64,000 nt of DNA from the IMG/VR virus record IMGVR_UViG_3300046536_000256, positions 1 through 64,000 of that record, one strand, 5' to 3'. Shown here in pieces: positions 1,736 to 39,475 of this stretch. Every line of letters begins with the position of its first letter. Position 1 is the stretch's first letter. Under the pieces are notes generated by a model. The model was not told where the DNA came from. It did no database searches and was given only the letters and a program-made list of their open reading frames with translations. A program made the translations under genes and the position numbers.

Positions 1736-1750
1736 GTAATATAGGTTTGA
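1736..1750 (-). promoter_or_regulatory. putative early (virion RNAP) promoter TCAAACCTATATTAC
   Basis: Identical copies at 12117, 23066 and 36990; TATTAC core matches the phiKZ early-promoter consensus. Confidence 0.75.
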
Positions 1751-5490: not shown

Positions 5491-5505
5491 GTAATATAGG
5501 TCTGA
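5491..5505 (-). promoter_or_regulatory. putative early promoter TCAGACCTATATTAC
   Basis: One-mismatch copy of the repeated motif, ~55 nt upstream of the chaperonin start. Confidence 0.75.
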
Positions 5506-12116: not shown

Positions 12117-12131
12117 GTAATATAGGTTTGA
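12117..12131 (-). promoter_or_regulatory. putative early promoter TCAAACCTATATTAC
   Basis: Exact copy of the repeated motif in an AT-rich intergenic region. Confidence 0.75.
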
Positions 12132-23065: not shown

Positions 23066-23080
23066 GTAATATAGGTTTGA
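23066..23080 (-). promoter_or_regulatory. putative early promoter TCAAACCTATATTAC
   Basis: Exact copy of the repeated motif. Confidence 0.75.
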
Positions 23081-24971: not shown

Positions 24972-25251
24972 AAGCTTTACCTCACGTACTTTATCGTTGA
25001 ATTGGTTTTCAGTTTTCCTATTGTTGCAGCAGCAGCTTGAACATATCACGGCGTTTTTCCTTAAGACGCTCGATGTCGATATGGTCTCACTTTACTTTCA
25101 ACGGAGATCTGTCCAACGATTGAATCAAGGCCTCTTTTGTCTGATTGAATCGTCCAAGGATATGTCCGTACACCATTCACTGTTTACGCAGTGATTCCCA
25201 TGGGTAACTTCTGTAAGCTTACCTTCTCGTTATAATCCAGATAAACACTGG

Positions 25252-25422
25252 TTACCACAGCTCCAGTAGAACCGTGACCATTCTCTTAAACCAAGAGTAA
25301 TTCCGAGGTAATCGGTTGCGAGGACCAACTATGTATTGTTGGTAGTCGGCACTCCCCGAGGAATGGCCACGGTAGTAGCTGGAAGGCAGAGGCGTAATCG
25401 TGCGATTCGGTCTGTTCGACAT
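25252..25422 (-). CDS. small hypothetical protein (56 aa)
   Basis: Hand-found MSNRPNRTITPLPSS...LLELW; weak SD. Confidence 0.4.
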   Translation of the reverse strand: MSNRPNRTITPLPSSYYRGHSSGSADYQQYIVGPRNRLPRNYSWFKRMVTVLLELW

Positions 25423-29414: not shown

Positions 29415-30353
29415 CTAACACACCGCGCTATGCCGTAAGTATTTCAAATGAAAGGCCTTCTCTATTATCTTCAATAGATCGACCCGAGAGTTAATGCAGT
29501 CCCGAATATACCGGAGTTGATCCAAGATTAATTCTTCGCCCCGTTCTTGCAGTATCCGGAACAGTTGGTCGTCAAAATTGGGATGACCGAATTCAATGTG
29601 AAAACGATTACCCCTGAGATCGGGCGCAACCGCCCAAGCATCTTTAGCCGTTTGAAAGGCATACAGGGTAGTCCGTGGCAGAGTGATCTCCAAGAAGAAC
29701 ATCCGGCTACGGATATACACTGTGGGTGCTGTTAACCGTACACTAGTCCAAAATACATCGGAAATGTATAACAGTCCTACACAGTTGACGTGGCTATTCG
29801 TTGCATTCACATGTGTAAGATCGATGTCGGCGTTAGTAAAGAATGTGCAGTGCTCCAGACTACAGTCTACGATACTGACAGTAGACTTGGTTGAAATCAC
29901 CGAACAGGATTCAATCCAACAGTTAGAAATCCAAGCATTTTTAGAGACGGCGGCATCTAAGAGCTCTACCTCGTCAAACGTTACCCCCGTGTAACTGTTT
30001 CGTTCTTTACCGTCACTGACAAGCACATCAGAGATGGTGTAGTTACACCCGATGCTGTAGATGTTGGCAACGGCGCAACGCCCGTGAAAGGTGTCGTTCT
30101 TACTCGTGCAGTTCTTGAGTACCACATCGCAGTACTCAAGGTCCTCAATATCCTCGTCCTCGTTCACCTGAAGTGACAGGTATTTGTTCGAGTCCACCTC
30201 CACGATGGATTCAGGACAGAGGCTGTATTTCAACATGTACTGCCCAATCGGGAAGTAGTAGCGGTCAACGCCCTCAATAGGTGCCGCGAGTTCCGGGAGG
30301 GGCATCGCGTTCAGCTTTACCCCGTCCAAATACAGACCCGGTTTTTGTGTCAT
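29415..30353 (-). CDS. beta-helix-like repeat protein, paralog 3 of 3
   Basis: Periodic I/V-x-N/D/S-C/S repeats; shared N- and C-terminal motifs with its neighbours. Confidence 0.75.
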   Translation of the reverse strand: MTQKPGLYLDGVKLNAMPLPELAAPIEGVDRYYFPIGQYMLKYSLCPESIVEVDSNKYLSLQVNEDEDIEDLEYCDVVLKNCTSKNDTFHGRCAVANIYSIGCNYTISDVLVSDGKERNSYTGVTFDEVELLDAAVSKNAWISNCWIESCSVISTKSTVSIVDCSLEHCTFFTNADIDLTHVNATNSHVNCVGLLYISDVFWTSVRLTAPTVYIRSRMFFLEITLPRTTLYAFQTAKDAWAVAPDLRGNRFHIEFGHPNFDDQLFRILQERGEELILDQLRYIRDCINSRVDLLKIIEKAFHLKYLRHSAVC

Positions 30354-31288
30354 ATTGGATCTCCTAACGTTCTTTCGAATTCAGCCCACAGGACCTGGAT
30401 GATTCTCCGGCGAGAACGAATGCAATCTACCACGTAATGATAGATGTCTTTCGGCAGAGCCAGTTCACAGTCAACCAATAACTCGGTCAACTTGGCCTCG
30501 AACTCTGGGTCATCCACCGGGACGTTAAACCCACCGCCTTGCCGGGTGATGGCAAACTCATCATTCCCCGTCTGATAACAGTACAGTGTCAGGTTAGGGA
30601 AATCCAAGCTGAAGAAGTACAAGCGGTTAGGGATGTGGCAGTCATCCACCTTCAGGTACATCTCGTTCAAACGGCTGTCGATTATCCGGATGAAATTCGC
30701 GGCATGTACACTGGCGTCGTTGAACTTACTCCCCTCCAGAACCAACGCTCCCTTAGAAGAGAACGACGAGTTCTTCATCGTGGACCCTTCGATACGTGCC
30801 TGACCCTCTGTGTGGACCGTGGAGTTGATGATTGACGAGTTGAGTACGAAGCTACCATCAGAGATCGTAGCGTTCTCCAAACGCGAGCTGATGACCGTCT
30901 GGTTGACTAACGGGTGCAGACGCGCGGTTTGCATCGACGAACGCGAGATATCCGAGTTCACGATGTTGCAAGCATTGGTCACCGTGTTGCTCAATACGCA
31001 GTTACCAGTAAAGGTATCGCGGTAACTGCTGCTGTTCGTGACGGTTACCCACGCGTGATTCTCGTCATCATTGTCCTCTTCGATTTCCAAGTCGAGGTAA
31101 GCAGCAGAGTCAATCTTGACCACCGAGTGTTCATCAAGAAAGAAGTGGAGTGTTAGGATCCCCACGGCTACTCGGTATTGATCGAAATCCCCAACACCGC
31201 CTTCATCGTCAACAGAGGGGTAAGTGTTTAGCCGGATAGGTTCCAGCTTGTGACCGTCAATGTATACGCCAGTTTCGTGTTCCATCAA
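30350..31288 (-). CDS. beta-helix-like repeat protein, paralog 2 of 3
   Basis: GVYIDGHKL, NSSSYRDTF, IPNRLYFFSLDFP, YVVDCIRSR. Confidence 0.75.
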   Translation of the reverse strand: MMEHETGVYIDGHKLEPIRLNTYPSVDDEGGVGDFDQYRVAVGILTLHFFLDEHSVVKIDSAAYLDLEIEEDNDDENHAWVTVTNSSSYRDTFTGNCVLSNTVTNACNIVNSDISRSSMQTARLHPLVNQTVISSRLENATISDGSFVLNSSIINSTVHTEGQARIEGSTMKNSSFSSKGALVLEGSKFNDASVHAANFIRIIDSRLNEMYLKVDDCHIPNRLYFFSLDFPNLTLYCYQTGNDEFAITRQGGGFNVPVDDPEFEAKLTELLVDCELALPKDIYHYVVDCIRSRRRIIQVLWAEFERTLGDPI

Positions 31289-31344: not shown

Positions 31345-32808
31345 TTAGACTGCGTAGATGTCGTCCCAAGGCCTTGTGCGGTCACCAACTTCGCGGACAA
31401 GCTGTCTAGCTTCATCCAACAGGCGAACGACTTTCAAACGAGACGTGATCGAGTCAGTCAGGTAACTCGCGATGCTGCGAGTCAGTAAGGTTGGTTGTGT
31501 GTGAAACCCTTCAGGGTCCATTGACAACTGCATAGCAATGAACTTCTGAATATCTTCGTCCGGAGTATCCAGACGCATGCGCTCCATGCTGTGTTGCTGA
31601 GTGCCCAGATCGAAATCCCGGCGAGTGGAGCGAACGAAGTACAACTTGTGTTGCGGGGTATCCAGCTCCAGGTAGGAGAACTTGTTGGGAACGTACACCG
31701 ACGGAGCGCTGATGTGCACACCATTGAAGCGGGTGTGTTTCACCAACAACTCACCCTCAGCGATTACACCCGATTTGTTCAGGTGGACATCTTTGACGGT
31801 AATACGGGTACCGCGAACGTTGGCGTCGAACAACTGGCTACCGGTAACCGTGACGTACCCGCTGCCGCTGACTTGAGTGTCGTGGATTTGTGAGTCGCGG
31901 TAAACACCGTGGGACACTGCCGAGTTAAACACCGAGGTACGCTTGAACTGACCCTCTTTAACGTTCATGCGTTCACGGATGTCTTTCGTCGGCACAGCTG
32001 GCTCTTCGCTCAGGTGGTTAAAGCCATACCCGTAACGATGGTCCACTTCCTTGGTACGCGCCAGTACAGAATTGTTCAGCACGTTAAAGGAAGACTCGGT
32101 GTTCACCAACAGTGATTCACCGATTGGCAGATCCTCGTTGCTGGACGAGTTGATCAAGACCAGTGTGCCATGAATGGCGAGGTTGGTTGGAGCGTGGCTG
32201 TTATGACGCGTTTCACCGCCACCCAGGGTAACTGTGGAGTTACCGTCCAGCAAGTAGTACGATTCAATCCCGTTGTTCTTCAACAGATACAGCGAGAAGA
32301 CTTTGTCGGCGTACAACTGGCTGACCTGGTGTGGCAAGTAGAACGCCTTCGGCAACAGGCTGTTACGGATGCGGTTGTAATCGACTTTCAAGCCGGTCGC
32401 AATCGGTTCCTGCAACACGCCTTCAAACATGAAGGTACCGGTGGCCTGAACCGATTGCAGCGCGTTGGCCACCGCTTCGGAGATCTTGGCTTCCGGGTCG
32501 AGGCCAGCCGCCTTCAGCACCTTTTCGGCGTTACGGATCTGGCGGTCGGTTGGCACTTCTTCGGCAACATCGGTGCCCGCAGGGGTTATGTGAGGCGCGG
32601 TAAAGCTCTTAGGATTATCCGAAGTCTCTTGAGCGATAGTCCCGATAGGTTCTTTGAAGGCCTTTTCCAGGTTCTTCTCGAACAGACTGTTTGCGGCTTC
32701 CTGAGTGAAACCTACTTCCTTTGCGGTGTCTAACGCCTTGAGCGCTTCGGCCACAGGCTTCAGGGTAAATTTATCCCCGTTGGCTGGTTTCTTTTCCACT
32801 TTACTCAT
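31345..32808 (-). CDS. beta-helix-like repeat protein with N-terminal extension, paralog 1 of 3
   Basis: Start reassigned to MSKVEKK (overlaps the ligase stop); VPNKFSYLELDTP, YLTDSITSR. Confidence 0.75.
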   Translation of the reverse strand: MSKVEKKPANGDKFTLKPVAEALKALDTAKEVGFTQEAANSLFEKNLEKAFKEPIGTIAQETSDNPKSFTAPHITPAGTDVAEEVPTDRQIRNAEKVLKAAGLDPEAKISEAVANALQSVQATGTFMFEGVLQEPIATGLKVDYNRIRNSLLPKAFYLPHQVSQLYADKVFSLYLLKNNGIESYYLLDGNSTVTLGGGETRHNSHAPTNLAIHGTLVLINSSSNEDLPIGESLLVNTESSFNVLNNSVLARTKEVDHRYGYGFNHLSEEPAVPTKDIRERMNVKEGQFKRTSVFNSAVSHGVYRDSQIHDTQVSGSGYVTVTGSQLFDANVRGTRITVKDVHLNKSGVIAEGELLVKHTRFNGVHISAPSVYVPNKFSYLELDTPQHKLYFVRSTRRDFDLGTQQHSMERMRLDTPDEDIQKFIAMQLSMDPEGFHTQPTLLTRSIASYLTDSITSRLKVVRLLDEARQLVREVGDRTRPWDDIYAV

Positions 32809-34768
32809 GAAGTGCTCCTGCTTTAATCTGTTGAATGAGTGCATCGATGCTCGAGGCAGCGGTTGCGTTAATCGTAGGGATATGCTGTTCAGCTGCTTTT
32901 AGTATCTTGCTCTGACCAGGCTTCTCCCCGATGAGGAGGTAATTGCAATCCTTGGTGAGTTTATCCACCAGTTCAATACCATGATCCCCGAAGTAGCTTT
33001 CCAGTTCTTCCCGGGCTTGACCGATGGTACCGGTGATGCAGACCTTCAGTTCCGTAATCGGACCCTCAGGCTCAACCAGAACATTAAGGTTCGCCAAGAT
33101 ACCTTCTGCGTTCTCCACGAACTCTTCACTTTCAAAGCTCAGGGCAATCGGGATAGACAAACCAGCAGAGAACCCTGGGATCTTGATCAGTTCGTCAGCA
33201 TTACCCAACCACTGAAGCAAGTTCACATTCCCCGGCCATGCGGCGGCCAGCTTCTTGGCACGCGTCAGATCAACACCAGGCAGACCCAGCGCCTTAATGA
33301 CACGGGACAACGGTTGACCTTTGCGCACTTCCTGAATGCGGTTGTAGATCTTCTCACCTACCACACGTTCATTTAGAAGAAGGATATCCACAGGCAACTT
33401 GATATAACCCTGTTCGATCAACTCGGCAACAGTCACAGGACCCAAGTCGTCGATATCCAGCGTGCGTTTGTGCGCAAGGTTCACGCAACGCAGCACAAGC
33501 TGTGCAGGACAGTCTGTGACGTTGGTACAGATGAGATCGGCACTCTGCTTGGTGATGCGCTTCTCCAGCGGCATGCAGCAGCTAGGGCACTCCTCAGGCG
33601 CTTTGAAGAGTTCACCTTCGCCATGTTCAATCACACGGTTCAGACGAGGGATCACATCCCCGTTACGAGTCACACCGATTACCGAACCTTTACGCAGCTC
33701 CACCGCTAGGAACTGTTTATAGTTGTCCAGATACGTGCGAGCACAGATCACCCCACCAATGCGGGTAGGAGCGTAAAGCCCCACCGGCACCACACGACCA
33801 GTACGAGTGGTATTCCACACGATATCGGTCAGAGTAGTAGCAACCTCCACATCTGGGTACTTGTACGCCAGCGCCCAGTTAGGGTACTTGTTGGTGACCC
33901 CCAGCTTTTCTTGCAATTCAAAGTCGTCGACCTTGATCACAATACCATCGGCTGGCCAGTCCTTGCTGTTGATGTTCTCCCGGATCGCTTCCAGCGACGC
34001 AACAGGCGCGCAATGGAAACCCAGCAGGGTCAGGTGGTTACGCAGTTCGCTGTACTTCTTCTTGCCCAAGGTACTGCTGCAATAGTAAGCGCCGAACCGC
34101 AGGATCCCTTTAACCGCGTGGTTCTGGTTCTCCGGCAAAGCACGAATCCAACCGCTGACTGCGTTACGAGGGGTAGCGGCTTGTTTAAGCGCTGTCTCGT
34201 TATACAGTTCAAAGTCGTGACAGGTGATGTGCCCTTCACCGCGGATGTTGACAGTGCCCGGGACAGGAACGTTGTTCAGGTCAGTCAGCATCCTTGGGAT
34301 GTTCAGACCGAACAAAGGCAAAGCATGGGTAACGTCTTCGCCCACCAGACCGGACCCACGAGTCACCATGGATATCAGTGGACCGTCGACATACGTCAGT
34401 TCCAACGCAATACCGTCCAGCTTAAGTTCATAGAAGAACAGAGTGTCTTCCGGGAACCGTGCGAGGAACTTGTCAACCGCGTCTTGGTTCAATCCCTTCT
34501 TCAAGCTCAGCATTGGGCTATCGAAGGTAACGGGTTTCAGGCCTTCATTAGTAGGCTCGTGGATTGGCACGGGTTTGCGAGCGGTTTCGAACAGTTCGGC
34601 AATTTCCGGGTGTTCCTCGGCCAACTCTTCGAAGCGCTCGACCATCTGGTCGTACAGATAATCTGGGATCTCAGACGTGTCCTTATTGAAATAAAGATCC
34701 GCGTGGTACATGATGTCACGATTTAAATCGTTCATCTCTGTGAAGATCGTTTTATGTTTTGCTTTCAT
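32801..34768 (-). CDS. ligA: NAD-dependent DNA ligase
   Basis: ELKLDG (KxDG), TRGSG..GEDVT, DGIVIK, OB domain, Cys4 zinc finger, HhH motifs, BRCT; start reassigned to MKAKHK. Confidence 0.97.
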   Translation of the reverse strand: MKAKHKTIFTEMNDLNRDIMYHADLYFNKDTSEIPDYLYDQMVERFEELAEEHPEIAELFETARKPVPIHEPTNEGLKPVTFDSPMLSLKKGLNQDAVDKFLARFPEDTLFFYELKLDGIALELTYVDGPLISMVTRGSGLVGEDVTHALPLFGLNIPRMLTDLNNVPVPGTVNIRGEGHITCHDFELYNETALKQAATPRNAVSGWIRALPENQNHAVKGILRFGAYYCSSTLGKKKYSELRNHLTLLGFHCAPVASLEAIRENINSKDWPADGIVIKVDDFELQEKLGVTNKYPNWALAYKYPDVEVATTLTDIVWNTTRTGRVVPVGLYAPTRIGGVICARTYLDNYKQFLAVELRKGSVIGVTRNGDVIPRLNRVIEHGEGELFKAPEECPSCCMPLEKRITKQSADLICTNVTDCPAQLVLRCVNLAHKRTLDIDDLGPVTVAELIEQGYIKLPVDILLLNERVVGEKIYNRIQEVRKGQPLSRVIKALGLPGVDLTRAKKLAAAWPGNVNLLQWLGNADELIKIPGFSAGLSIPIALSFESEEFVENAEGILANLNVLVEPEGPITELKVCITGTIGQAREELESYFGDHGIELVDKLTKDCNYLLIGEKPGQSKILKAAEQHIPTINATAASSIDALIQQIKAGALHE

Positions 34769-34839
34769 TGAAAAACCTTCAAGCATAAATAAGGTTAAGG
34801 TAGGAGCCTGAGGATACCTCCCCAAGCTCCATGGTATTC

Positions 34840-35172
34840 TTAATGAAGGGTGTGCTTTGGCTTATTGAGGAAGGAAGTCGTCGAGCCAACAATGACACCG
34901 ACTTTCATACGCTCAACATCCCCTACCAGCAAATGCGGATCCACCGACCGGAGGAATTGGAAAAGCATCGAAGGGTTGCCAGCCTCGTCGTCGATGATTT
35001 GTTTTACAAAACGGTGCGTAGAAGCCGGCAGAAGCATGGACAGCTTTTCTACCTCGTCTGCTTCGTCGTCGAGTACATCCATACACGTTTTATCGAGGAC
35101 GACGTCGTCAGGTTCCAAATCGAATGCAACCAGAAAAGCCCGGTACACTCTTAGCAATTCTTGTTTGGTCAT
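34840..35172 (-). CDS. degenerate nucleotidyltransferase-like paralog
   Basis: Start MTKQELL; aligns to the two upstream genes but lacks GGAL and DxD. Confidence 0.5.
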   Translation of the reverse strand: MTKQELLRVYRAFLVAFDLEPDDVVLDKTCMDVLDDEADEVEKLSMLLPASTHRFVKQIIDDEAGNPSMLFQFLRSVDPHLLVGDVERMKVGVIVGSTTSFLNKPKHTLH

Positions 35173-35261
35173 CAAGTGACCCCTTGTACAGTTGGTGAAG
35201 TTTCCCATTACGATGACTGGTACAGTTCTGTTTAATGTGTAATGGGAAACCCCAGCCGGTT

Positions 35262-35735
35262 TCAGCCCTTGGCACGATCGGCCATGAACTGATTGAGCGC
35301 TGCAATGTCTTTCAGGTCCTGAGGTTCTCGGTGGGTATCAAGCCACTCGCGTTTCAGGCACTGTTTATACGTCAGCAACGTCATTGGATCAAAGCAGGTC
35401 ATGCCGTCAATTTCGACAGTATCGTGAGGAATGTCAAACGGCCGAACAATGCAATTGACCGACCAAAACAAGGTCTGTGATTTATCAAGCAGCCGGATAA
35501 TACCGGAACCCTCTTCACACCAGACTAGGCGTTGTTTTTCGTTCAGCTCCTTGAAACGTTCAGGGGAAACCCAAACGTTCAGGTCAAGTGTGCTTTCACG
35601 GATACCCATCGCCATGAGCGCGCCACCGCCGCCCAGTACGAGTTCACCTGGTTCGAACCACTTGGGGCCTTCAATAGCTGGCGCGTTGGTTGCCAGGTCG
35701 TACAGGCGCTTCAGTTGTTCTTTGTTCCAGATCAT
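35262..35735 (-). CDS. Pol-beta-superfamily nucleotidyltransferase-like protein
   Basis: LVLGGGGALMAMGIRESTLDLNV and C-terminal LLTYK...QDLKDI. Confidence 0.6.
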   Translation of the reverse strand: MIWNKEQLKRLYDLATNAPAIEGPKWFEPGELVLGGGGALMAMGIRESTLDLNVWVSPERFKELNEKQRLVWCEEGSGIIRLLDKSQTLFWSVNCIVRPFDIPHDTVEIDGMTCFDPMTLLTYKQCLKREWLDTHREPQDLKDIAALNQFMADRAKG

Positions 35736-36172
35736 TACGCCATCCTCGCGGTAAGTCGGGGTGATCGCACTAGAGATTCGAGTTGGACAATTTCCATGAG
35801 GTCCCGTTCCCGCTTATTAGGTTTACGGTTCGGCATGGCCGCCAAGTGACGCTTCTGTTTCAGCATCTCACTTGGACTATAGATCCAGACGTTGTCCACG
35901 CAAACAATCCCAGTGGTGTCACTGAGTTCGTGCAGGTCAATGAAAGGATCGTACTCAATACGGGGTGAAACGTTTTCTTCAAGAAGTACCGGTTTGGACA
36001 TACCAACCCATTTGAACGTCATGGGGGATACGTCCACATCCAGATCCACGGTTTCTTCGCGGACGTCCATCATCACTAATGCACCACCGGCGCTCAGTAT
36101 CACCAAATGTGCCGGATCACCCAGAGCTGTTACCAGTGCTTTGTAGCGTGATATCACTTGATCCCTGTTCAT
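35735..36172 (-). CDS. Pol-beta-superfamily nucleotidyltransferase-like protein
   Basis: ILSAGGALVMMDVREETVDLDVD (intact DxD) and C-terminal MLKQK...RERDLMEI. Confidence 0.65.
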   Translation of the reverse strand: MNRDQVISRYKALVTALGDPAHLVILSAGGALVMMDVREETVDLDVDVSPMTFKWVGMSKPVLLEENVSPRIEYDPFIDLHELSDTTGIVCVDNVWIYSPSEMLKQKRHLAAMPNRKPNKRERDLMEIVQLESLVRSPRLTARMA

Positions 36173-36587
36173 CCTGTCGCCTCGACTGCGGTGTGATAAT
36201 TGCTGGGGCGATTGCCCTCAGTTGTTTAAAGAACTGCCCCGACGCCCAAGCATTAATGTTTTCGCGAACGTAACTGCCAAACAGTGATTCCTTGACGAAG
36301 TTCTCAAAGGCAACCTTTAAAGTTTCCTCAGAACTGCCGCTGCTTGGAACTAAACCTTTATCACGGATCTTCCGAACCGCTTCCGATAAACGGATACGGT
36401 CCAAGCTAATATCCATGATCCAGGCTGGATAACGTTTACGCAGCACAAAATACAAAGCGCCGTGTTCCTCTATAAAACCAAGAACAATCGTACTCTTTCT
36501 GTCTTCTGTTTCGGCTTCGATCAGAATTGGTTCGAAGGACCCATTAAAGAAGTCTGGGTCCAACTGGAAAAAAGACTTTAAGTTCAT
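36117..36587 (-). CDS. hypothetical protein
   Basis: 156-aa ORF in the operon. Confidence 0.65.
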   Translation of the reverse strand: MNLKSFFQLDPDFFNGSFEPILIEAETEDRKSTIVLGFIEEHGALYFVLRKRYPAWIMDISLDRIRLSEAVRKIRDKGLVPSSGSSEETLKVAFENFVKESLFGSYVRENINAWASGQFFKQLRAIAPAIITPQSRRQDEQGSSDITLQSTGNSSG

Positions 36588-36989: not shown

Positions 36990-37004
36990 GTAATATAGGT
37001 TTGA
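36990..37004 (-). promoter_or_regulatory. putative early promoter TCAAACCTATATTAC
   Basis: Exact copy of the motif, 5 nt past the SbcC stop. Confidence 0.75.
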
Positions 37005-37009
37005 AATTA

Positions 37010-39475
37010 TTAAGCAATAATGCTGTCCTGATTTACTTCCCCCGTAAGAGTCAAACCTTCATACCGCATGGCGATTACGTTTGGTTTGTTAAACAATCCG
37101 TACTGGTTCACATAGTGCGAAACCATGAAGAGTTGTCGTGGTGACTTCTGCCGGGTGTATTCCTGAACGAAGCTAAAGAACCTGCCCCGATTAATCTCGT
37201 CCAAGTTAACCCCCACCTCGTCCATCAGCAACGGGTATTCAACCGGGTGGTACGAGAGCATCACAAACCGGAAAGCCCAGTCAATGAGGTCGCGTTCCCC
37301 TGCGCTGCAATCCGTAACGTCCGGCGTAGGCGAAGCATCCCCCACAATTACCGGGAACTTGTACGTCAGATCCCCGTTCTCTTTACTGCAAGGCTTAATA
37401 ACCAGAGGCTTGGCGTAGATCGTCTTGAACAAGGCGTTCATGTTGGTACACACCGCCTTGATGAAGTCACCCATCAGACGACCAATCAACCCCTTGTTCG
37501 GACACAACCCATCCATGTAGATGTCGACAATCAACAAACGTCGCTTCAACCGCTCGATGTCACCACTGATCGAGTTCACCACTGCTGTCAGGGAACGGTT
37601 CTTAATGATGGAGGTCATGTAGTGGTCTTTCTCCTCACTGAGGATACTGATCCGCTCATCCACCTTCTTCCGGAACTCGGCTTTCCCCTGATTACCCAAC
37701 CCGATCATGATCTCTTCCCGCAGCCCGTGTAACCGATTAACATCTCGGCTGTACGACACGATGTGATGCTGAGTCCGCTTCAAAGATTCCAGACGCTCTT
37801 TGTAGTGGGTGATCTGGTTGTTCTCGACCAACAATTCTTTCTCAACACTGGCCAAGTAGTGAGCGACGTCCAATGCGTTGTTTCTGTCCAGAAGCCCTAA
37901 GCGCGTGTCTAGGACGTTCTGTTCCATAAGCAACTCATCTTTCTTCGCCAACAGGCTAAACCGCTCAGAGAAGGCAAGCAGCGCGTTTAACAGTCGGTTT
38001 GAATCGGTTTTGCCGATGTCGTACTCTTTGATCAGGGTGGGCAAGATCCCGCAGTGGTTATTCTCACGGACAAACACAAACAGCTGGTTCATCCCCAAGT
38101 ACCAATCCGCGTCGTTCTCGATCTGACGCTTGACGTCGGCTTCTTCCTTCCTCAGGCGTTCGACCTTCGCCACCAGTGCAGCCTTCTGCTGTTTCAGGTG
38201 CTCGATCTCAGCCGGAGTAATACCGATCTTGAACGCATGCTCGCAATCAGGACATTCAACCGTTTCCGCTTTCTCATAGTGAGTCAGCTTGTGGGTCATA
38301 TCGTCCAACGACATGGTGGTGTGCCGCAGTTCGTTTGCCAGCTGATCTTGCAGCGTCAACCAACCCTTGTAGGTTGCCCCGTTGACCGCAGGATCGCTTA
38401 CCACGGTGATACGGCCCAAGAACTCACGGAAACCAGTGATCACCAGTTCTAAGTTGCCCAGCGGGATCTCAGGGTCATTGAACACCGGATACTGCTGCAA
38501 CAACACCGCGTACTGGGCCAGCTCTTGTTCCAACTTAGCCAAGTCCTCACGAATGTGATCCGCTTGAACCTGAAAGACTTCTGGGTCAGCCAAGAACTCT
38601 TCCAACCCGTCCAAGACCCCAGCGTGCTCAGCGATCACTCGCTTCAATACACCGGCTTGTTCTTGGTGACGGTTCATCAGTTCCGTGGTGAAATTAATCG
38701 CTTGGGCTACCTCTGGCTGGGTGTAGATAATCCCGCTCAGTTTATTTGTAGTCAATTGATCAACTAGGCGATTAAAGTCTTGGATCTTAACGGTTAAGTC
38801 ACGATCCACCGTAATGCCTTCCAGCCCGCCACGAACTAACAGTGAGTCCCGAAGTTCCCCTTCGATGGTCTTGATGCGGACTTCAAGTTCATCGATCCCG
38901 TACTCGTTAATCTCCGCGAGCTTACGGTTCTCTTCGGTGTAGCGTGCAATCTGATTCTTGATCGCCGCTTTCAACTCATTGCGTTCGTTCTTGAGTTTGG
39001 TCCACACCCCCAAGGCGTAGTCGGTGTCGTTCGGGTAGATCTGCATGAAGATCTCTTTTCGTTTACCGGGAGACATCAACGACAGCAGATCAACCACGCG
39101 CAAACCACTCAACACTTTATTGAGGGTAGAATCCAAGCGGAAATAACTCGACACCAATTCTTTCTGTGAAGCCCCCGTGCCGTTTGGATTGAGTTCCTTT
39201 CCATTCAGCTTAAAGCTATGACCGTTACCTTTACCGGTATACGAGTCTAGAGCGAAATGGCGGTCGCCGATTTGGATTTCGACATACTTGCGGCCGCCTG
39301 CTTCGTAGTTCCCATTTTCTGGGGGAAGCGGATTCATTTCTTTCAGAATGCTGGTCTTACCACTACCGTTCGTTGAAATGAACAGGTTAATCATGTGGGG
39401 AGTAGTCAGTTCAACTTTCTGGATCCCACTTTTCAACAAAGGAATGTATTGTTCCAGGATAAGTTTCAGCAACAT
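37010..39475 (-). CDS. sbcC: SbcC/Rad50 (T4 gp46-like) SMC ATPase
   Basis: Walker A STNGSGKTS, long coiled coils, CPDC zinc hook, CSAGE signature, LLMDE Walker B, SH switch. Confidence 0.92.
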   Translation of the reverse strand: MLLKLILEQYIPLLKSGIQKVELTTPHMINLFISTNGSGKTSILKEMNPLPPENGNYEAGGRKYVEIQIGDRHFALDSYTGKGNGHSFKLNGKELNPNGTGASQKELVSSYFRLDSTLNKVLSGLRVVDLLSLMSPGKRKEIFMQIYPNDTDYALGVWTKLKNERNELKAAIKNQIARYTEENRKLAEINEYGIDELEVRIKTIEGELRDSLLVRGGLEGITVDRDLTVKIQDFNRLVDQLTTNKLSGIIYTQPEVAQAINFTTELMNRHQEQAGVLKRVIAEHAGVLDGLEEFLADPEVFQVQADHIREDLAKLEQELAQYAVLLQQYPVFNDPEIPLGNLELVITGFREFLGRITVVSDPAVNGATYKGWLTLQDQLANELRHTTMSLDDMTHKLTHYEKAETVECPDCEHAFKIGITPAEIEHLKQQKAALVAKVERLRKEEADVKRQIENDADWYLGMNQLFVFVRENNHCGILPTLIKEYDIGKTDSNRLLNALLAFSERFSLLAKKDELLMEQNVLDTRLGLLDRNNALDVAHYLASVEKELLVENNQITHYKERLESLKRTQHHIVSYSRDVNRLHGLREEIMIGLGNQGKAEFRKKVDERISILSEEKDHYMTSIIKNRSLTAVVNSISGDIERLKRRLLIVDIYMDGLCPNKGLIGRLMGDFIKAVCTNMNALFKTIYAKPLVIKPCSKENGDLTYKFPVIVGDASPTPDVTDCSAGERDLIDWAFRFVMLSYHPVEYPLLMDEVGVNLDEINRGRFFSFVQEYTRQKSPRQLFMVSHYVNQYGLFNKPNVIAMRYEGLTLTGEVNQDSIIA

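What the first reader, a model, noticed from the sequence alone, without database searches (positions are those of the whole stretch)
34840..36172. Tandem triplet of minimal nucleotidyltransferase-like proteins with graded active-site decay
Seen: copy 1 has SAGGAL...REETVDLDVD (intact DxD), copy 2 GGGGAL...RESTLDLNVW (D-x-N), and copy 3 has lost both motifs but keeps the N-terminal helix pattern (n(R/K)(D/E)Q...Y). Copies 1 and 2 end with the L..K...R..D..(D/E)I helix typical of AbiEii/MenT/DUF6036-type NTases. Established: this superfamily nucleotidylates tRNA ends, proteins or small molecules and makes signalling nucleotides. Inference: an undescribed early phage system of one active enzyme plus pseudo-enzyme regulators or decoys. 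It could repair or modify tRNA ends, inactivate defence proteins, or act as antitoxin mimics of host type IV TA/Abi NTases.
Basis: partly seen in the sequence, partly recalled or inferred. Interest (0 to 1): 0.72.

Follow-up and report, generated by a model that had tools for sequence, protein, structure and literature searches.

The report
Jumbo-phage minimal nucleotidyltransferase paralogue cassette
Three neighbouring genes of an EL-like giant phage encode one apparently intact small nucleotidyltransferase, one anciently altered sister copy and one stripped-down but still conserved copy, all of an uncharacterised family found mainly in giant phages, and nobody knows what the enzyme modifies.

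Summary
On the minus strand, 35735-36172 (145 aa), 35262-35735 (157 aa) and 34840-35172 (110 aa) encode three homologous proteins. Copy 1 models confidently as a minimal Pol-beta-fold nucleotidyltransferase. Its nearest solved structures are TM1012, ANT(2'')-Ia, LnuA and MenT1/3. It carries GG...TxDxD, DLH, K107 and D124, which parallels the MenT catalytic set.

Copy 2 is not a recently decayed duplicate. It belongs to an old, monophyletic sister clade that always has D-L-N-x-W, and it sits next to copy 1 in phage EL (gp120/gp121) and other EL-like contigs.

Copy 3 is a real but very remote homologue (profile-profile 96.6%, shuffles and unrelated neighbours score far lower). It lacks every catalytic residue and the C-terminal helices, yet it is under purifying selection in five contigs.

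The genes lie in a probable early operon between an SbcC-like gene and the NAD-dependent ligase gene. A fourth family member at about 25021-25359 is a genuine pseudogene.

No Pfam, NCBIfam or PADLOC model matches. Only PHROG 12854 (unknown function) does. The complex prediction gave no answer and the substrate is unknown.

Verdict: an uncharacterised variant of a known enzyme kind, of moderate interest.

The parts
35735..36172 (-). Copy 1, 145 aa: full-motif minimal nucleotidyltransferase, orthologue of phage EL gp120
   Evidence: ORF. GAGG ribosome-binding site 7 nt before the ATG. PHROG 12854 at 9e-26. AF2 pLDDT 90.6. NTase-fold matches. 49% identical to EL gp120.
35262..35735 (-). Copy 2, 157 aa: member of the conserved D-L-N-x-W sister clade, orthologue of EL gp121. 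Its ATG overlaps the copy 1 stop codon (TAATG).
   Evidence: overlap. PHROG 12854 at 5e-13. Clade alignment A7. Monophyly 100/94. dN/dS 0.11 against L003.
34840..35172 (-). Copy 3, 110 aa: truncated, motif-less remote homologue. It covers the N-terminal alpha/beta core only and keeps D78-x-H80.
   Evidence: hhalign 94-96.6% with shuffle and negative controls. hmmsearch and genome-search hits of relatives at 2.4e-6. Present in L003, L029, L030 and G001. dN/dS about 0.07. AF2 with a family alignment gives pLDDT 90.5. A wide VIA search returns only NTase folds at the top, Z 6.8-4.
35200..35250 (-). Conserved hairpin between copy 2 and copy 3: perfect 12-bp stem, 27-nt loop
   Evidence: RNA MFE -27.4 kcal/mol, z -2.7. 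Arms invariant in L003, L029 and L030. Single occurrence in the 233-kb genome. No Rfam family.
36990..37006 (-). Promoter-like motif TTTCAAACCTATATTAC upstream of the operon
   Evidence: Five copies in the window, all on the minus strand, against 0.69 expected. Aligned with the annotated EL promoter upstream of gp119. Literature motifs in PMC7058600 and PMC7598289.
36598..36876 (-). 92-aa ORF, EL gp119-like, first gene after the promoter motif. Not a family member.
   Evidence: PHROG 16812. Synteny. hhalign negative.
36117..36587 (-). 156-aa ORF whose 3' end overlaps the copy 1 start by 56 nt. Not a family member.
   Evidence: Homologues with a conserved overlap in L010, L029, L030 and G001. 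hhalign negative. dN/dS 0.13.
32801..34825 (-). NAD-dependent DNA ligase (probable start about 34771), downstream neighbour in all EL-like contigs
37010..39475 (-). SbcC-like ATPase, 821 aa, upstream neighbour
   Evidence: PHROG 77 at 1.5e-65. Synteny.
25021..25359 (-). Pseudogene remnant of a fourth family member, from a different DxD subclade
   Evidence: tblastn with the intact 152-aa orthologue L017:4986-5444 shows three frames, two in-frame stops and a missing N-terminal part. Weak profile hit with a TGA. Subclade placement.

Best explanation
This is a cassette in a probable early operon of an EL-like (Chimalliviridae) giant phage from a rhizosphere metagenome. It encodes paralogues of a family of about 135-150-aa Pol-beta-fold nucleotidyltransferases found mainly in giant phages.

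Copy 1 is the predicted catalytic subunit. It has the triphosphate-binding GG loop, T41-x-D43-x-D45, D79-x-H81, K107 and D124. This is the same pattern as the MenT1 residues T39, D41, K137 and D152.

Copy 2 is a conserved sister paralogue. It keeps the Gly loop, T-x-D, K and D, but always has Asn in place of the second metal-binding Asp, and R...N in place of DLH. I infer a nucleotide-binding but catalytically impaired or altered partner, made in step with copy 1 through the overlapping stop and start codons.

Copy 3 is a lineage-specific, fast-evolving but selected fragment of the fold with no nucleotide-binding residues. I infer that it acts only by binding a protein, as a regulator or decoy.

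Most likely chemistry (inference): copy 1 transfers an NMP from an NTP to a 3'-hydroxyl of an RNA or tRNA-like nucleic-acid end, as MenT/AbiEii do, and the partner copies tune or restrain it.

Sub-confidences:
- Homology and fold: 0.95
- Copy 1 catalytically competent: 0.75
- Copy 2 non-catalytic: 0.65
- The copies form a complex: 0.45
- Nucleic-acid acceptor: 0.4
For: - Fold.
- Family: 514 representatives at E<=1e-3 with a strong signature. The viral-contig hits all lie on 170-311-kb contigs. The ESM Atlas cluster is 98% viral.
- MenT residues: PMC10435456, against column conservation of T41 106/125, D43 114/125, K107 110/125 and D124 123/125.
- Copy 2 clade. It lies directly after copy 1 in EL, L010, L011, L012, L020, L029 and L030. 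TAATG overlap.
- Copy 3.
- Early promoter motif: with PMC7058600 and PMC7598289.
- Nucleic-acid or nucleotide context: SbcC-like, NAD ligase and RNase H here. dUTPase, dCTP deaminase and DHFR sit beside distant members.
- Precedent for a partner protein that binds and switches off an NTase of this group: AbiEi-AbiEii (bioRxiv 10.64898/2026.01.19.700257). The AbiEi C-terminal domain is itself a structural match of the copy 1 model at Z 8.1.
Against: - No activity, interaction or expression data exist. The complex prediction gave no answer.
- No Pfam, NCBIfam or PADLOC model matches.
- All three proteins are acidic (pI 4.9-5.6), which is unusual for nucleic-acid binders.
- The nearest characterised structures include small-molecule adenylyltransferases with Z scores equal to or higher than those of MenT.
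- Synteny with the ligase and SbcC-like genes is seen only among fairly close relatives, so it may be inherited gene order rather than functional linkage.
- G001 has copy 1 and copy 3 but no copy 2, so copy 2 is dispensable in at least one lineage.
- Copy 3 is not recognised by Foldseek on PDB or by the language-model search, and its model rests on an alignment dominated by family members.
Confidence: 0.4

Rival explanations
1. Small-molecule nucleotidylyltransferase. Copy 1 (with copy 2) adenylylates a hydroxyl group of a small molecule, such as an antibiotic-like compound, a metabolite or a signalling nucleotide, as ANT(2'')-Ia and LnuA do. One possible purpose is to neutralise a chemical or signalling defence early in infection.
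For: - ANT(2'')-Ia and LnuA are among the best structural matches (Z 9.5-9.7; top Swiss-Prot hits).
- Acidic pI.
- Sequence-family members are fused to GNAT acetyltransferase and NUDIX domains, as in bifunctional modifying enzymes.
- One member sits beside an Acb3-family gene and a DHH-like gene in a phiKZ-like contig.
Against: - No match to the Aminoglyc_resit or other Pfam models.
- The T-x-D...K...D pattern parallels the MenT set.
- GNAT and NUDIX enzymes also act on tRNA and RNA ends.
- The neighbourhoods are nucleic-acid and nucleotide metabolism genes.
Confidence: 0.25
2. Two enzymes rather than an enzyme plus a pseudoenzyme. Copy 2 is itself active, with altered metal use or a different reaction, and the pair acts in sequence in the way separate CC-adding and A-adding enzymes do.
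For: Copy 2 keeps the Gly-rich loop, R46, T49, D51, K124 and D140, and has clade-specific invariant residues (W55, an R and an N on the third strand, an F-D pair). It evolves under dN/dS 0.11.
Against: Asn replaces the second carboxylate and the DLH strand motif is gone in every clade member. To my knowledge no active Pol-beta NTase has D-x-N. G001 lacks copy 2.
Confidence: 0.15
3. Toxin-like NTase with mimic partners. In one version, copy 1 is a MenT/AbiEii-type translation inhibitor used for host shut-off and is held in check by copies 2 and 3. In the other, the degenerate copies mimic AbiEi-type antitoxin domains and silence host AbiEii/MenT defence toxins.
For: - MenT1/3 structural matches and a shared residue pattern (PMC10435456).
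- The AbiEi C-terminal domain and Rv2827c match both models.
- AbiEi binds AbiEii and drives inhibitory autophosphorylation at the conserved S/T before the catalytic Asp (bioRxiv 10.64898/2026.01.19.700257). The family keeps T41.
Against: - No PF08843 match and no PADLOC match.
- No wHTH antitoxin is present.
- Copy 1 lacks the larger four-helix lobe of MenT.
- The phage depends on host tRNAs.
- No interaction evidence.
Confidence: 0.12
4. Protein AMPylase. Copy 1 nucleotidylates a host or phage protein, as MNT does to HEPN toxins.
For: Minimal NTases of similar size AMPylate proteins. MNT chains appear among the weak matches of the copy 3 model.
Against: MNT-type structures are not among the strong matches of copy 1. 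No HEPN partner is present. The K and D C-terminal motifs are typical of the AbiEii/MenT group.
Confidence: 0.08
5. Copies 2 and 3 are functionless relics of duplication.
For: Catalytic residues are lost. A fourth family member in the same genome really is a pseudogene.
Against: Intact reading frames in five or more contigs, low dN/dS, clade-specific invariant residues and good ribosome-binding sites.
Confidence: 0.03

Closest known systems
TM1012 of Thermotoga maritima (PDB 2ewr/2fcl) and the DUF6036 (PF19502) group of minimal nucleotidyltransferases
   Same: Same size and overall fold. TM1012 is the best solved match (Z 10.5, 124 of 145 residues aligned). A few family relatives give sub-threshold DUF6036 hits.
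   Different: The Pfam model does not reach its cut-off on any copy or anywhere in the genome. TM1012 and DUF6036 have no known function, so they give no mechanistic guidance.
MenT1/MenT3/MenT4 and AbiEii (DUF1814, PF08843) tRNA-acceptor-end nucleotidyltransferase toxins
   Same: Fold match at Z 9.2-9.4. The family has the same residue pattern, (S/T)-x-D-x-D, a later Lys and a C-terminal Asp (PMC10435456).
   Different: - No HMM match.
- About half the size, with a much smaller helical lobe.
- Phage-encoded in an early operon.
- No AbiEi- or MenA-type antitoxin.
- The partners are degenerate paralogues of the enzyme itself.
ANT(2'')-Ia and LnuA antibiotic adenylyltransferases
   Same: Comparable size and fold (Z 9.5-9.7). 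Acidic proteins.
   Different: No sequence-model match. No resistance context. Found in giant phages.
Pseudomonas phage EL gp120/gp121 and PHROG 12854
   Same: Direct orthologues of copy 1 and copy 2 in the same gene order: SbcC-like, gp119, gp120, gp121, NAD ligase.
   Different: EL lacks the 156-aa ORF and copy 3. All are annotated as hypothetical, and no functional study turned up in five literature searches.
RlaP, the RNA-ligase-associated Pol-beta NTase of giant phages (PMC7824862)
   Same: A small NTase encoded beside a ligase in giant phages and proposed to restore nucleotides at ends before ligation. It is a functional analogy for the ligase-adjacent position here.
   Different: No Pfam RlaP hit. 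Here the neighbour is an NAD-dependent DNA ligase, not an RNA ligase. The association holds only within EL-like phages.

Membership tests
Pol-beta-fold nucleotidyltransferase superfamily | alpha/beta core fold with the helix-turn carrying G[GS] and the following strand carrying DxD | tested here: met
   Copy 1 model has pLDDT 90.6. Foldseek and VIA matches are almost exclusively NTases. The copy 3 model gives the same list at lower Z, but was built with a family alignment.
Pol-beta-fold nucleotidyltransferase superfamily | hG[GS]x9-13Dh[DE]h motif | tested here: met
   Copy 1 has G29-G30, twelve residues, then D43-L-D45. Not met in copy 2 (D51-L-N53) or copy 3 (K43-L-S45 at the aligned positions).
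Pol-beta-fold nucleotidyltransferase superfamily | third metal-binding carboxylate on a neighbouring strand | tested here: inconclusive
   The candidates are D79 (D in 70/125, S in 25/125) and D47 (73/125).
AbiEii/MenT (DUF1814, PF08843) | match to the family profile | tested here: not met
   No Pfam hit at E<=1 for any copy. No PADLOC hit.
AbiEii/MenT (DUF1814, PF08843) | motifs III (Lys) and IV (Asp) in the C-terminal helices, plus S/T-x-D | tested here: met
   T41, D43, K107 and D124 are conserved in 85-98% of 125 family members. Copy 2 keeps T49, D51, K124 and D140. The correspondence to MenT1 T39/D41/K137/D152 (PMC10435456) rests on pattern and fold match, not on superposed coordinates.
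AbiEii/MenT (DUF1814, PF08843) | cognate antitoxin (AbiEi/COG5340, MenA) encoded alongside | tested here: not met
   The neighbours are a 92-aa ORF, a 156-aa ORF, paralogues and the ligase. None matches a Pfam model or the family profile.
AbiEii/MenT (DUF1814, PF08843) | toxicity and tRNA 3'-end nucleotidylation | not testable with these tools
   Needs expression and alpha-32P-NTP assays.
DUF6036 (PF19502) | match to the family profile above the gathering score | tested here: not met
   No hit on the proteins or in the six-frame genome at E<=10. Only 4 of 125 relatives give sub-threshold hits.
Aminoglycoside/lincosamide nucleotidyltransferases (ANT(2''), Lnu) | match to the family profile; antibiotic substrate | tested here: not met
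   No Pfam hit. Fold similarity only. Substrate not testable.
PHROG 12854 (phage proteins of unknown function) | match to the family profile | tested here: met
   Copy 1 at 9.3e-26 and copy 2 at 4.7e-13. Copy 3 has no hit.
RlaP (ligase-associated Pol-beta NTase) | match to the Pfam RlaP profile and association with an RNA ligase | tested here: not met
   No Pfam hit. The neighbouring ligase is an NAD-dependent DNA ligase.

The most novel reading that the evidence does not exclude
The cassette is a self-regulating early counter-defence module. A minimal MenT-like transferase works with pseudo-transferase paralogues (copy 2, copy 3). These either gate its activity, as AbiEi gates AbiEii, or act as decoys that bind and silence host AbiEii/MenT-type or other NTase-based defence proteins before the phage nucleus is established. 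That would be a new class of phage anti-defence proteins derived from the fold of the enzyme they oppose.
Probability: 0.12. Interest if true: 0.8.

Novelty: new variant of a known kind. Interest (0 to 1): 0.52.

Why it matters
Chimalliviridae carry hundreds of genes of unknown function. This work defines a sizeable family of minimal nucleotidyltransferases centred on these phages (514 representative clusters). It shows that EL-like phages keep an intact copy next to a conserved catalytically altered copy, and sometimes next to a third stripped-down copy.

Pairings of an enzyme with a pseudoenzyme paralogue are a recurring regulatory design. Here the parts are small (110-157 aa), tractable, and have orthologues in a cultivable phage (EL gp120/gp121).

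Finding the acceptor would show whether giant phages use MenT-like chemistry for repair, host takeover or counter-defence. It would also give a function to relatives of the uncharacterised TM1012/DUF6036 group.

Tried and rejected
- Pfam, NCBIfam and PADLOC scans of the three proteins and two neighbours: nothing usable.
- PDB sequence searches with copy 1 and with the family profile: only chance-level hits.
- megablast of the region against phage genomes: no match.
It was rebuilt without them.
- Complex prediction of copy 1 with copy 2: score 0.00, 'no answer', so not used as evidence either way.
- Idea that the 92-aa and 156-aa upstream ORFs, or the genes following the homologue in Ralstonia phage FLC1-1B, are further copies: rejected, hhalign probability at most 2%.
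- Idea that the Asp at the usually Gly position 36 of copy 1 tracks the presence of copy 3: rejected, since L030 has Gly with copy 3 present.
- RlaP membership: rejected.
- Foldseek on PDB and the language-model search did not recognise copy 3.
- Rfam: no family for the conserved hairpin.
- Sequencing runs: only rhizosphere DNA metagenomes hold the region, so there is no expression evidence and read laying was not used.
- Literature searches for DUF6036, TM1012, EL gp120/gp121 and phage NTases found no functional study.
Full report
**The observation**

Three ORFs lie head to tail on the minus strand at the coordinates given.
- Copy 1 is 35735-36172 (145 aa).
- Copy 2 is 35262-35735 (157 aa).
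- Copy 3 is 34840-35208 as listed. The start used by gene callers in relatives is Met13 at 35172, giving 110 aa. An AAGGGG ribosome-binding site precedes it.

Copy 1 carries G29-G30, then T41-x-D43-x-D45-x-D47. Copy 2 carries G35-G38, then T49-x-D51-L-N53-x-W55. Both end with the Lys...Asp..(Asp/Glu)-Ile helices.

Copies 1 and 2 are detectably homologous by BLASTP (E 3e-4). Both match PHROG 12854, a phage family of unknown function.

Copy 3 is invisible to BLASTP, but profile-profile comparison detects it.
- Against a 125-member family alignment it gives 94.4% with two sequences, 96.3% with three and 96.6% (E 5.6e-10) with five.
- Forty column shuffles gave scores of at most 16.6 against the observed 44.8.
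- Thirteen unrelated neighbouring proteins gave at most 2%.
- Plain profile searches also hit copy 3 relatives at 2.4e-6.

**What the proteins are**

With a 15-sequence alignment, AlphaFold2 models copy 1 at mean pLDDT 90.6.
- Foldseek and VIA-align return almost only nucleotidyltransferase-fold proteins: TM1012 (Z 10.5), a Paracoccidioides NTase-like protein (10.1), ANT(2'')-Ia (9.7), LnuA (9.5), MenT3 (9.4), MenT1 (9.3) and the C-terminal domain of the antitoxin AbiEi (8.1).
- AlphaFold DB clusters give uncharacterised proteins and entries labelled 'nucleotidyltransferase' or 'AbiEii'.
- Swiss-Prot gives ANT(2'')-Ia and LinA first.

No Pfam, NCBIfam or PADLOC model matches any copy. The DUF6036 model finds nothing in the whole 233-kb genome. 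Only 4 of 125 relatives give sub-threshold DUF6036 hits.

An exhaustive profile search found 514 representative clusters at E<=1e-3, mostly 130-150 aa. They share a strong signature: an N-terminal MNK...Y helix, a GGALVMxGLRExTxDLDxD block, a (D/S)LH strand, a QK helix and a KRxQDxxDI helix.

In that family T41, D43, K107 and D124 are conserved in 85-98% of members. This parallels the residues shown to matter in MenT1 (T39, D41, K137, D152) and MenT3 (S78, D80, K189, D211) (PMC10435456).

Some relatives are fused to GNAT acetyltransferase and NUDIX domains.

The hits in viral contigs all lie on 170-311-kb contigs. The nearest ESM Atlas cluster is 98% viral.

**Copy 2 is not a decaying duplicate**

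Its D-L-N-x-W motif, a GGGG loop, an Arg and an Asn replacing the DLH strand motif, and an F-D pair are shared with EL gp121 and with proteins from other contigs.

In a maximum-likelihood tree the twelve copy-2-type sequences form one clade (support 100/94), separate from all 44 DxD-type members.

The copy-2-type gene directly follows a copy-1-type gene in EL, L010, L011, L012, L020, L029 and L030. Here the copy 1 stop and copy 2 start overlap as TAATG. dN/dS against the L003 orthologue is 0.11.

It keeps the four residues that correspond to the MenT1 set. It lacks the second metal-binding carboxylate and the strand motif. I therefore infer a nucleotide-binding but catalytically impaired or altered partner. 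That is an inference, not a result.

**Copy 3**

It aligns without gaps to the first 90-100 residues of the family. The aligned positions read as follows:
- D27-K-T-C30 where the family has S-A-G-G.
- K43-L-S45 where the family has D-L-D.
- D78-x-H80 retained.
- The sequence ends where the Lys-bearing helix would begin.

It is closer to the DxD-type profile (94.3% over 103 residues) than to the copy-2 clade (51.5% over 48 residues).

It occurs in the window, L003, L029, L030 and G001, at 48-75% identity with many invariant positions, including a C-terminal TLH.

Non-synonymous divergence is 0.16 against synonymous divergence of 0.73. The synonymous value is saturated, so the ratio of about 0.07 is rough.

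A model built with a family-dominated alignment is confident (pLDDT 90.5). In a search that does not depend on Foldseek, its top matches are again NTase folds, though only at Z 6.8-4. Foldseek on PDB and the language-model search do not recognise it.

It is a maintained gene, not a relic, and it cannot bind nucleotides in the family's usual way.

**Context**

The genome is a complete 233,283-bp record with terminal repeats, from rhizosphere metagenomes. Its closest cultured relatives are EL-like phages (genus Elvirus, Chimalliviridae).

The gene order is SbcC-like ATPase, gp119-like ORF, (156-aa ORF), copy 1, copy 2, (copy 3), NAD-dependent ligase..., RNase H. This order is shared by all EL-like contigs examined.

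Immediately after the SbcC-like gene lies TTTCAAACCTATATTAC. It is one of five copies in the window, all on the minus strand, against 0.69 expected. It matches the annotated EL promoter upstream of gp119, the published EL consensus and the phiKZ early motif (PMC7058600 Table 2). Such motifs have proved to be early, virion-polymerase promoters wherever transcripts were mapped (PMC7598289). 'Early' is thus supported by inference only.

In more distant giant phages, single family members sit beside an SbcC-like gene (L013), DHFR (L014), dUTPase (L018), dCTP deaminase (L021), an SspB-like gene (L016), or an Acb3-family gene and a DHH-like gene (L027).

The cassette turns over.
- G001 has a ligase 91% identical to the window's. 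It has copy 1 and copy 3 but no copy 2.
- Synonymous divergence of copy 1 and copy 3 between the window and G001 (about 0.8) exceeds that of the flanking ligase (0.44).
- A fourth family member, from another subclade, is intact in G001. In the window it is only a frame-shifted, stop-containing 3' remnant at about 25021-25359.

**How it most likely works**

Shown:
- The fold.
- The homology of all three copies.
- The motif content.
- Conservation and selection.
- Tight linkage of copies 1 and 2.
- The promoter-like motif.

Inferred:
- Copy 1 is an active NMP transferase.
- Copy 2 is a non-catalytic or altered nucleotide-binding partner.
- Copy 3 acts by protein binding.

For the acceptor I favour a nucleic-acid 3' end, RNA or tRNA-like (about 0.4). 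The reasons are the MenT-like residue set and the nucleic-acid and nucleotide-metabolism neighbourhoods.

A small molecule is the main rival (about 0.25). The reasons are the ANT/Lnu structural matches, the acidic pI of 4.9-5.6 and the GNAT and NUDIX fusions.

AbiEi-AbiEii is a precedent for a partner that regulates such an enzyme by binding. There the antitoxin binds the NTase and triggers inhibitory autophosphorylation at the Ser/Thr preceding the catalytic Asp (bioRxiv 10.64898/2026.01.19.700257). The AbiEi C-terminal domain resembles the present fold, and the family keeps T41. This is a lead, not evidence.

The only interaction test available gave no answer.

**Comparison with known families**

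The cassette works like, and folds like, the minimal NTases of the TM1012/DUF6036, ANT(2'')/Lnu and AbiEii/MenT groups. It fails the profile-membership test for each of them. It has no antitoxin of the known kinds.

It is a member of PHROG 12854 (copies 1 and 2). Copies 1 and 2 are orthologous to EL gp120 and gp121, which have been annotated as hypothetical since the EL genome was deposited.

RlaP, the ligase-associated NTase of giant phages (PMC7824862), is a functional analogy only.

**Verdict**

The finding is real. The evolutionary story (graded decay) is wrong for copy 2 and misleading for copy 3. The proposed roles remain untested.

I rate it a new variant of a known kind: an uncharacterised giant-phage NTase family with conserved degenerate paralogue partners. 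Interest is 0.52.

Noticed in passing
window 25021-25359 (-): Pseudogene remnant of a fourth member of the same NTase family. It is read in three frames, has two in-frame stops, and lacks the N-terminal part that would carry the GG/DxD motifs. The intact 152-aa orthologue is L017:4986-5444 in the related phage G001.
   Followed up: yes
window 35200-35250 (-): Hairpin with a perfect 12-bp stem and 27-nt loop between copy 2 and copy 3. It is invariant in L003, L029 and L030, although the flanking proteins are only 50-85% identical. It occurs once in the genome, is absent from G001 (which lacks copy 2), and matches no Rfam family. Its function is unknown; it may control processing or translation of copy 3.
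   Followed up: partly
window 1736-1748, 5491-5503, 12117-12129, 23066-23078, 36990-37002 (all -): Repeated AAACCTATATTAC motif, with an AT-rich TTTC extension. It matches the predicted EL promoter and the phiKZ early-promoter core. These are probably early promoters for the virion RNA polymerase that define operons on the minus strand.
   Followed up: partly
window 36117-36587 (-): 156-aa ORF of unknown function whose last 56 nt overlap the start of copy 1. The overlap is conserved in G001 and L029 (56 nt), L010 (44 nt) and L030 (20 nt). The ORF is absent from phage EL and has no match in cultured phages.
   Followed up: partly
window 34840-36172 compared with L022 (G001): Synonymous divergence of copy 1 and copy 3 between the window and G001 (about 0.8) is about twice that of the adjacent ligase (0.44), and G001 lacks copy 2. 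This suggests cassette exchange or faster turnover inside conserved flanks.
   Followed up: partly
L027:2396-3755: In a phiKZ-like contig a family member (P0034) lies next to a gene with the Pfam Acb3 family and near a DHH-like phosphoesterase. This could be an anti-defence neighbourhood.
   Followed up: no
window 29415-30353 and 30350-31288 (-): Two adjacent ORFs of exactly 312 aa each, with no PHROG match, lie between the 499-aa gene that follows the ligase and the RNase H gene. They may be another tandem paralogue pair.
   Followed up: no
L018:4661-4996: A 111-aa ORF just upstream of the family member in this contig begins with the family's N-terminal helix (hhalign 91.5% over 39 columns) and then diverges. 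It could be a partial duplication or a frame problem.
   Followed up: no
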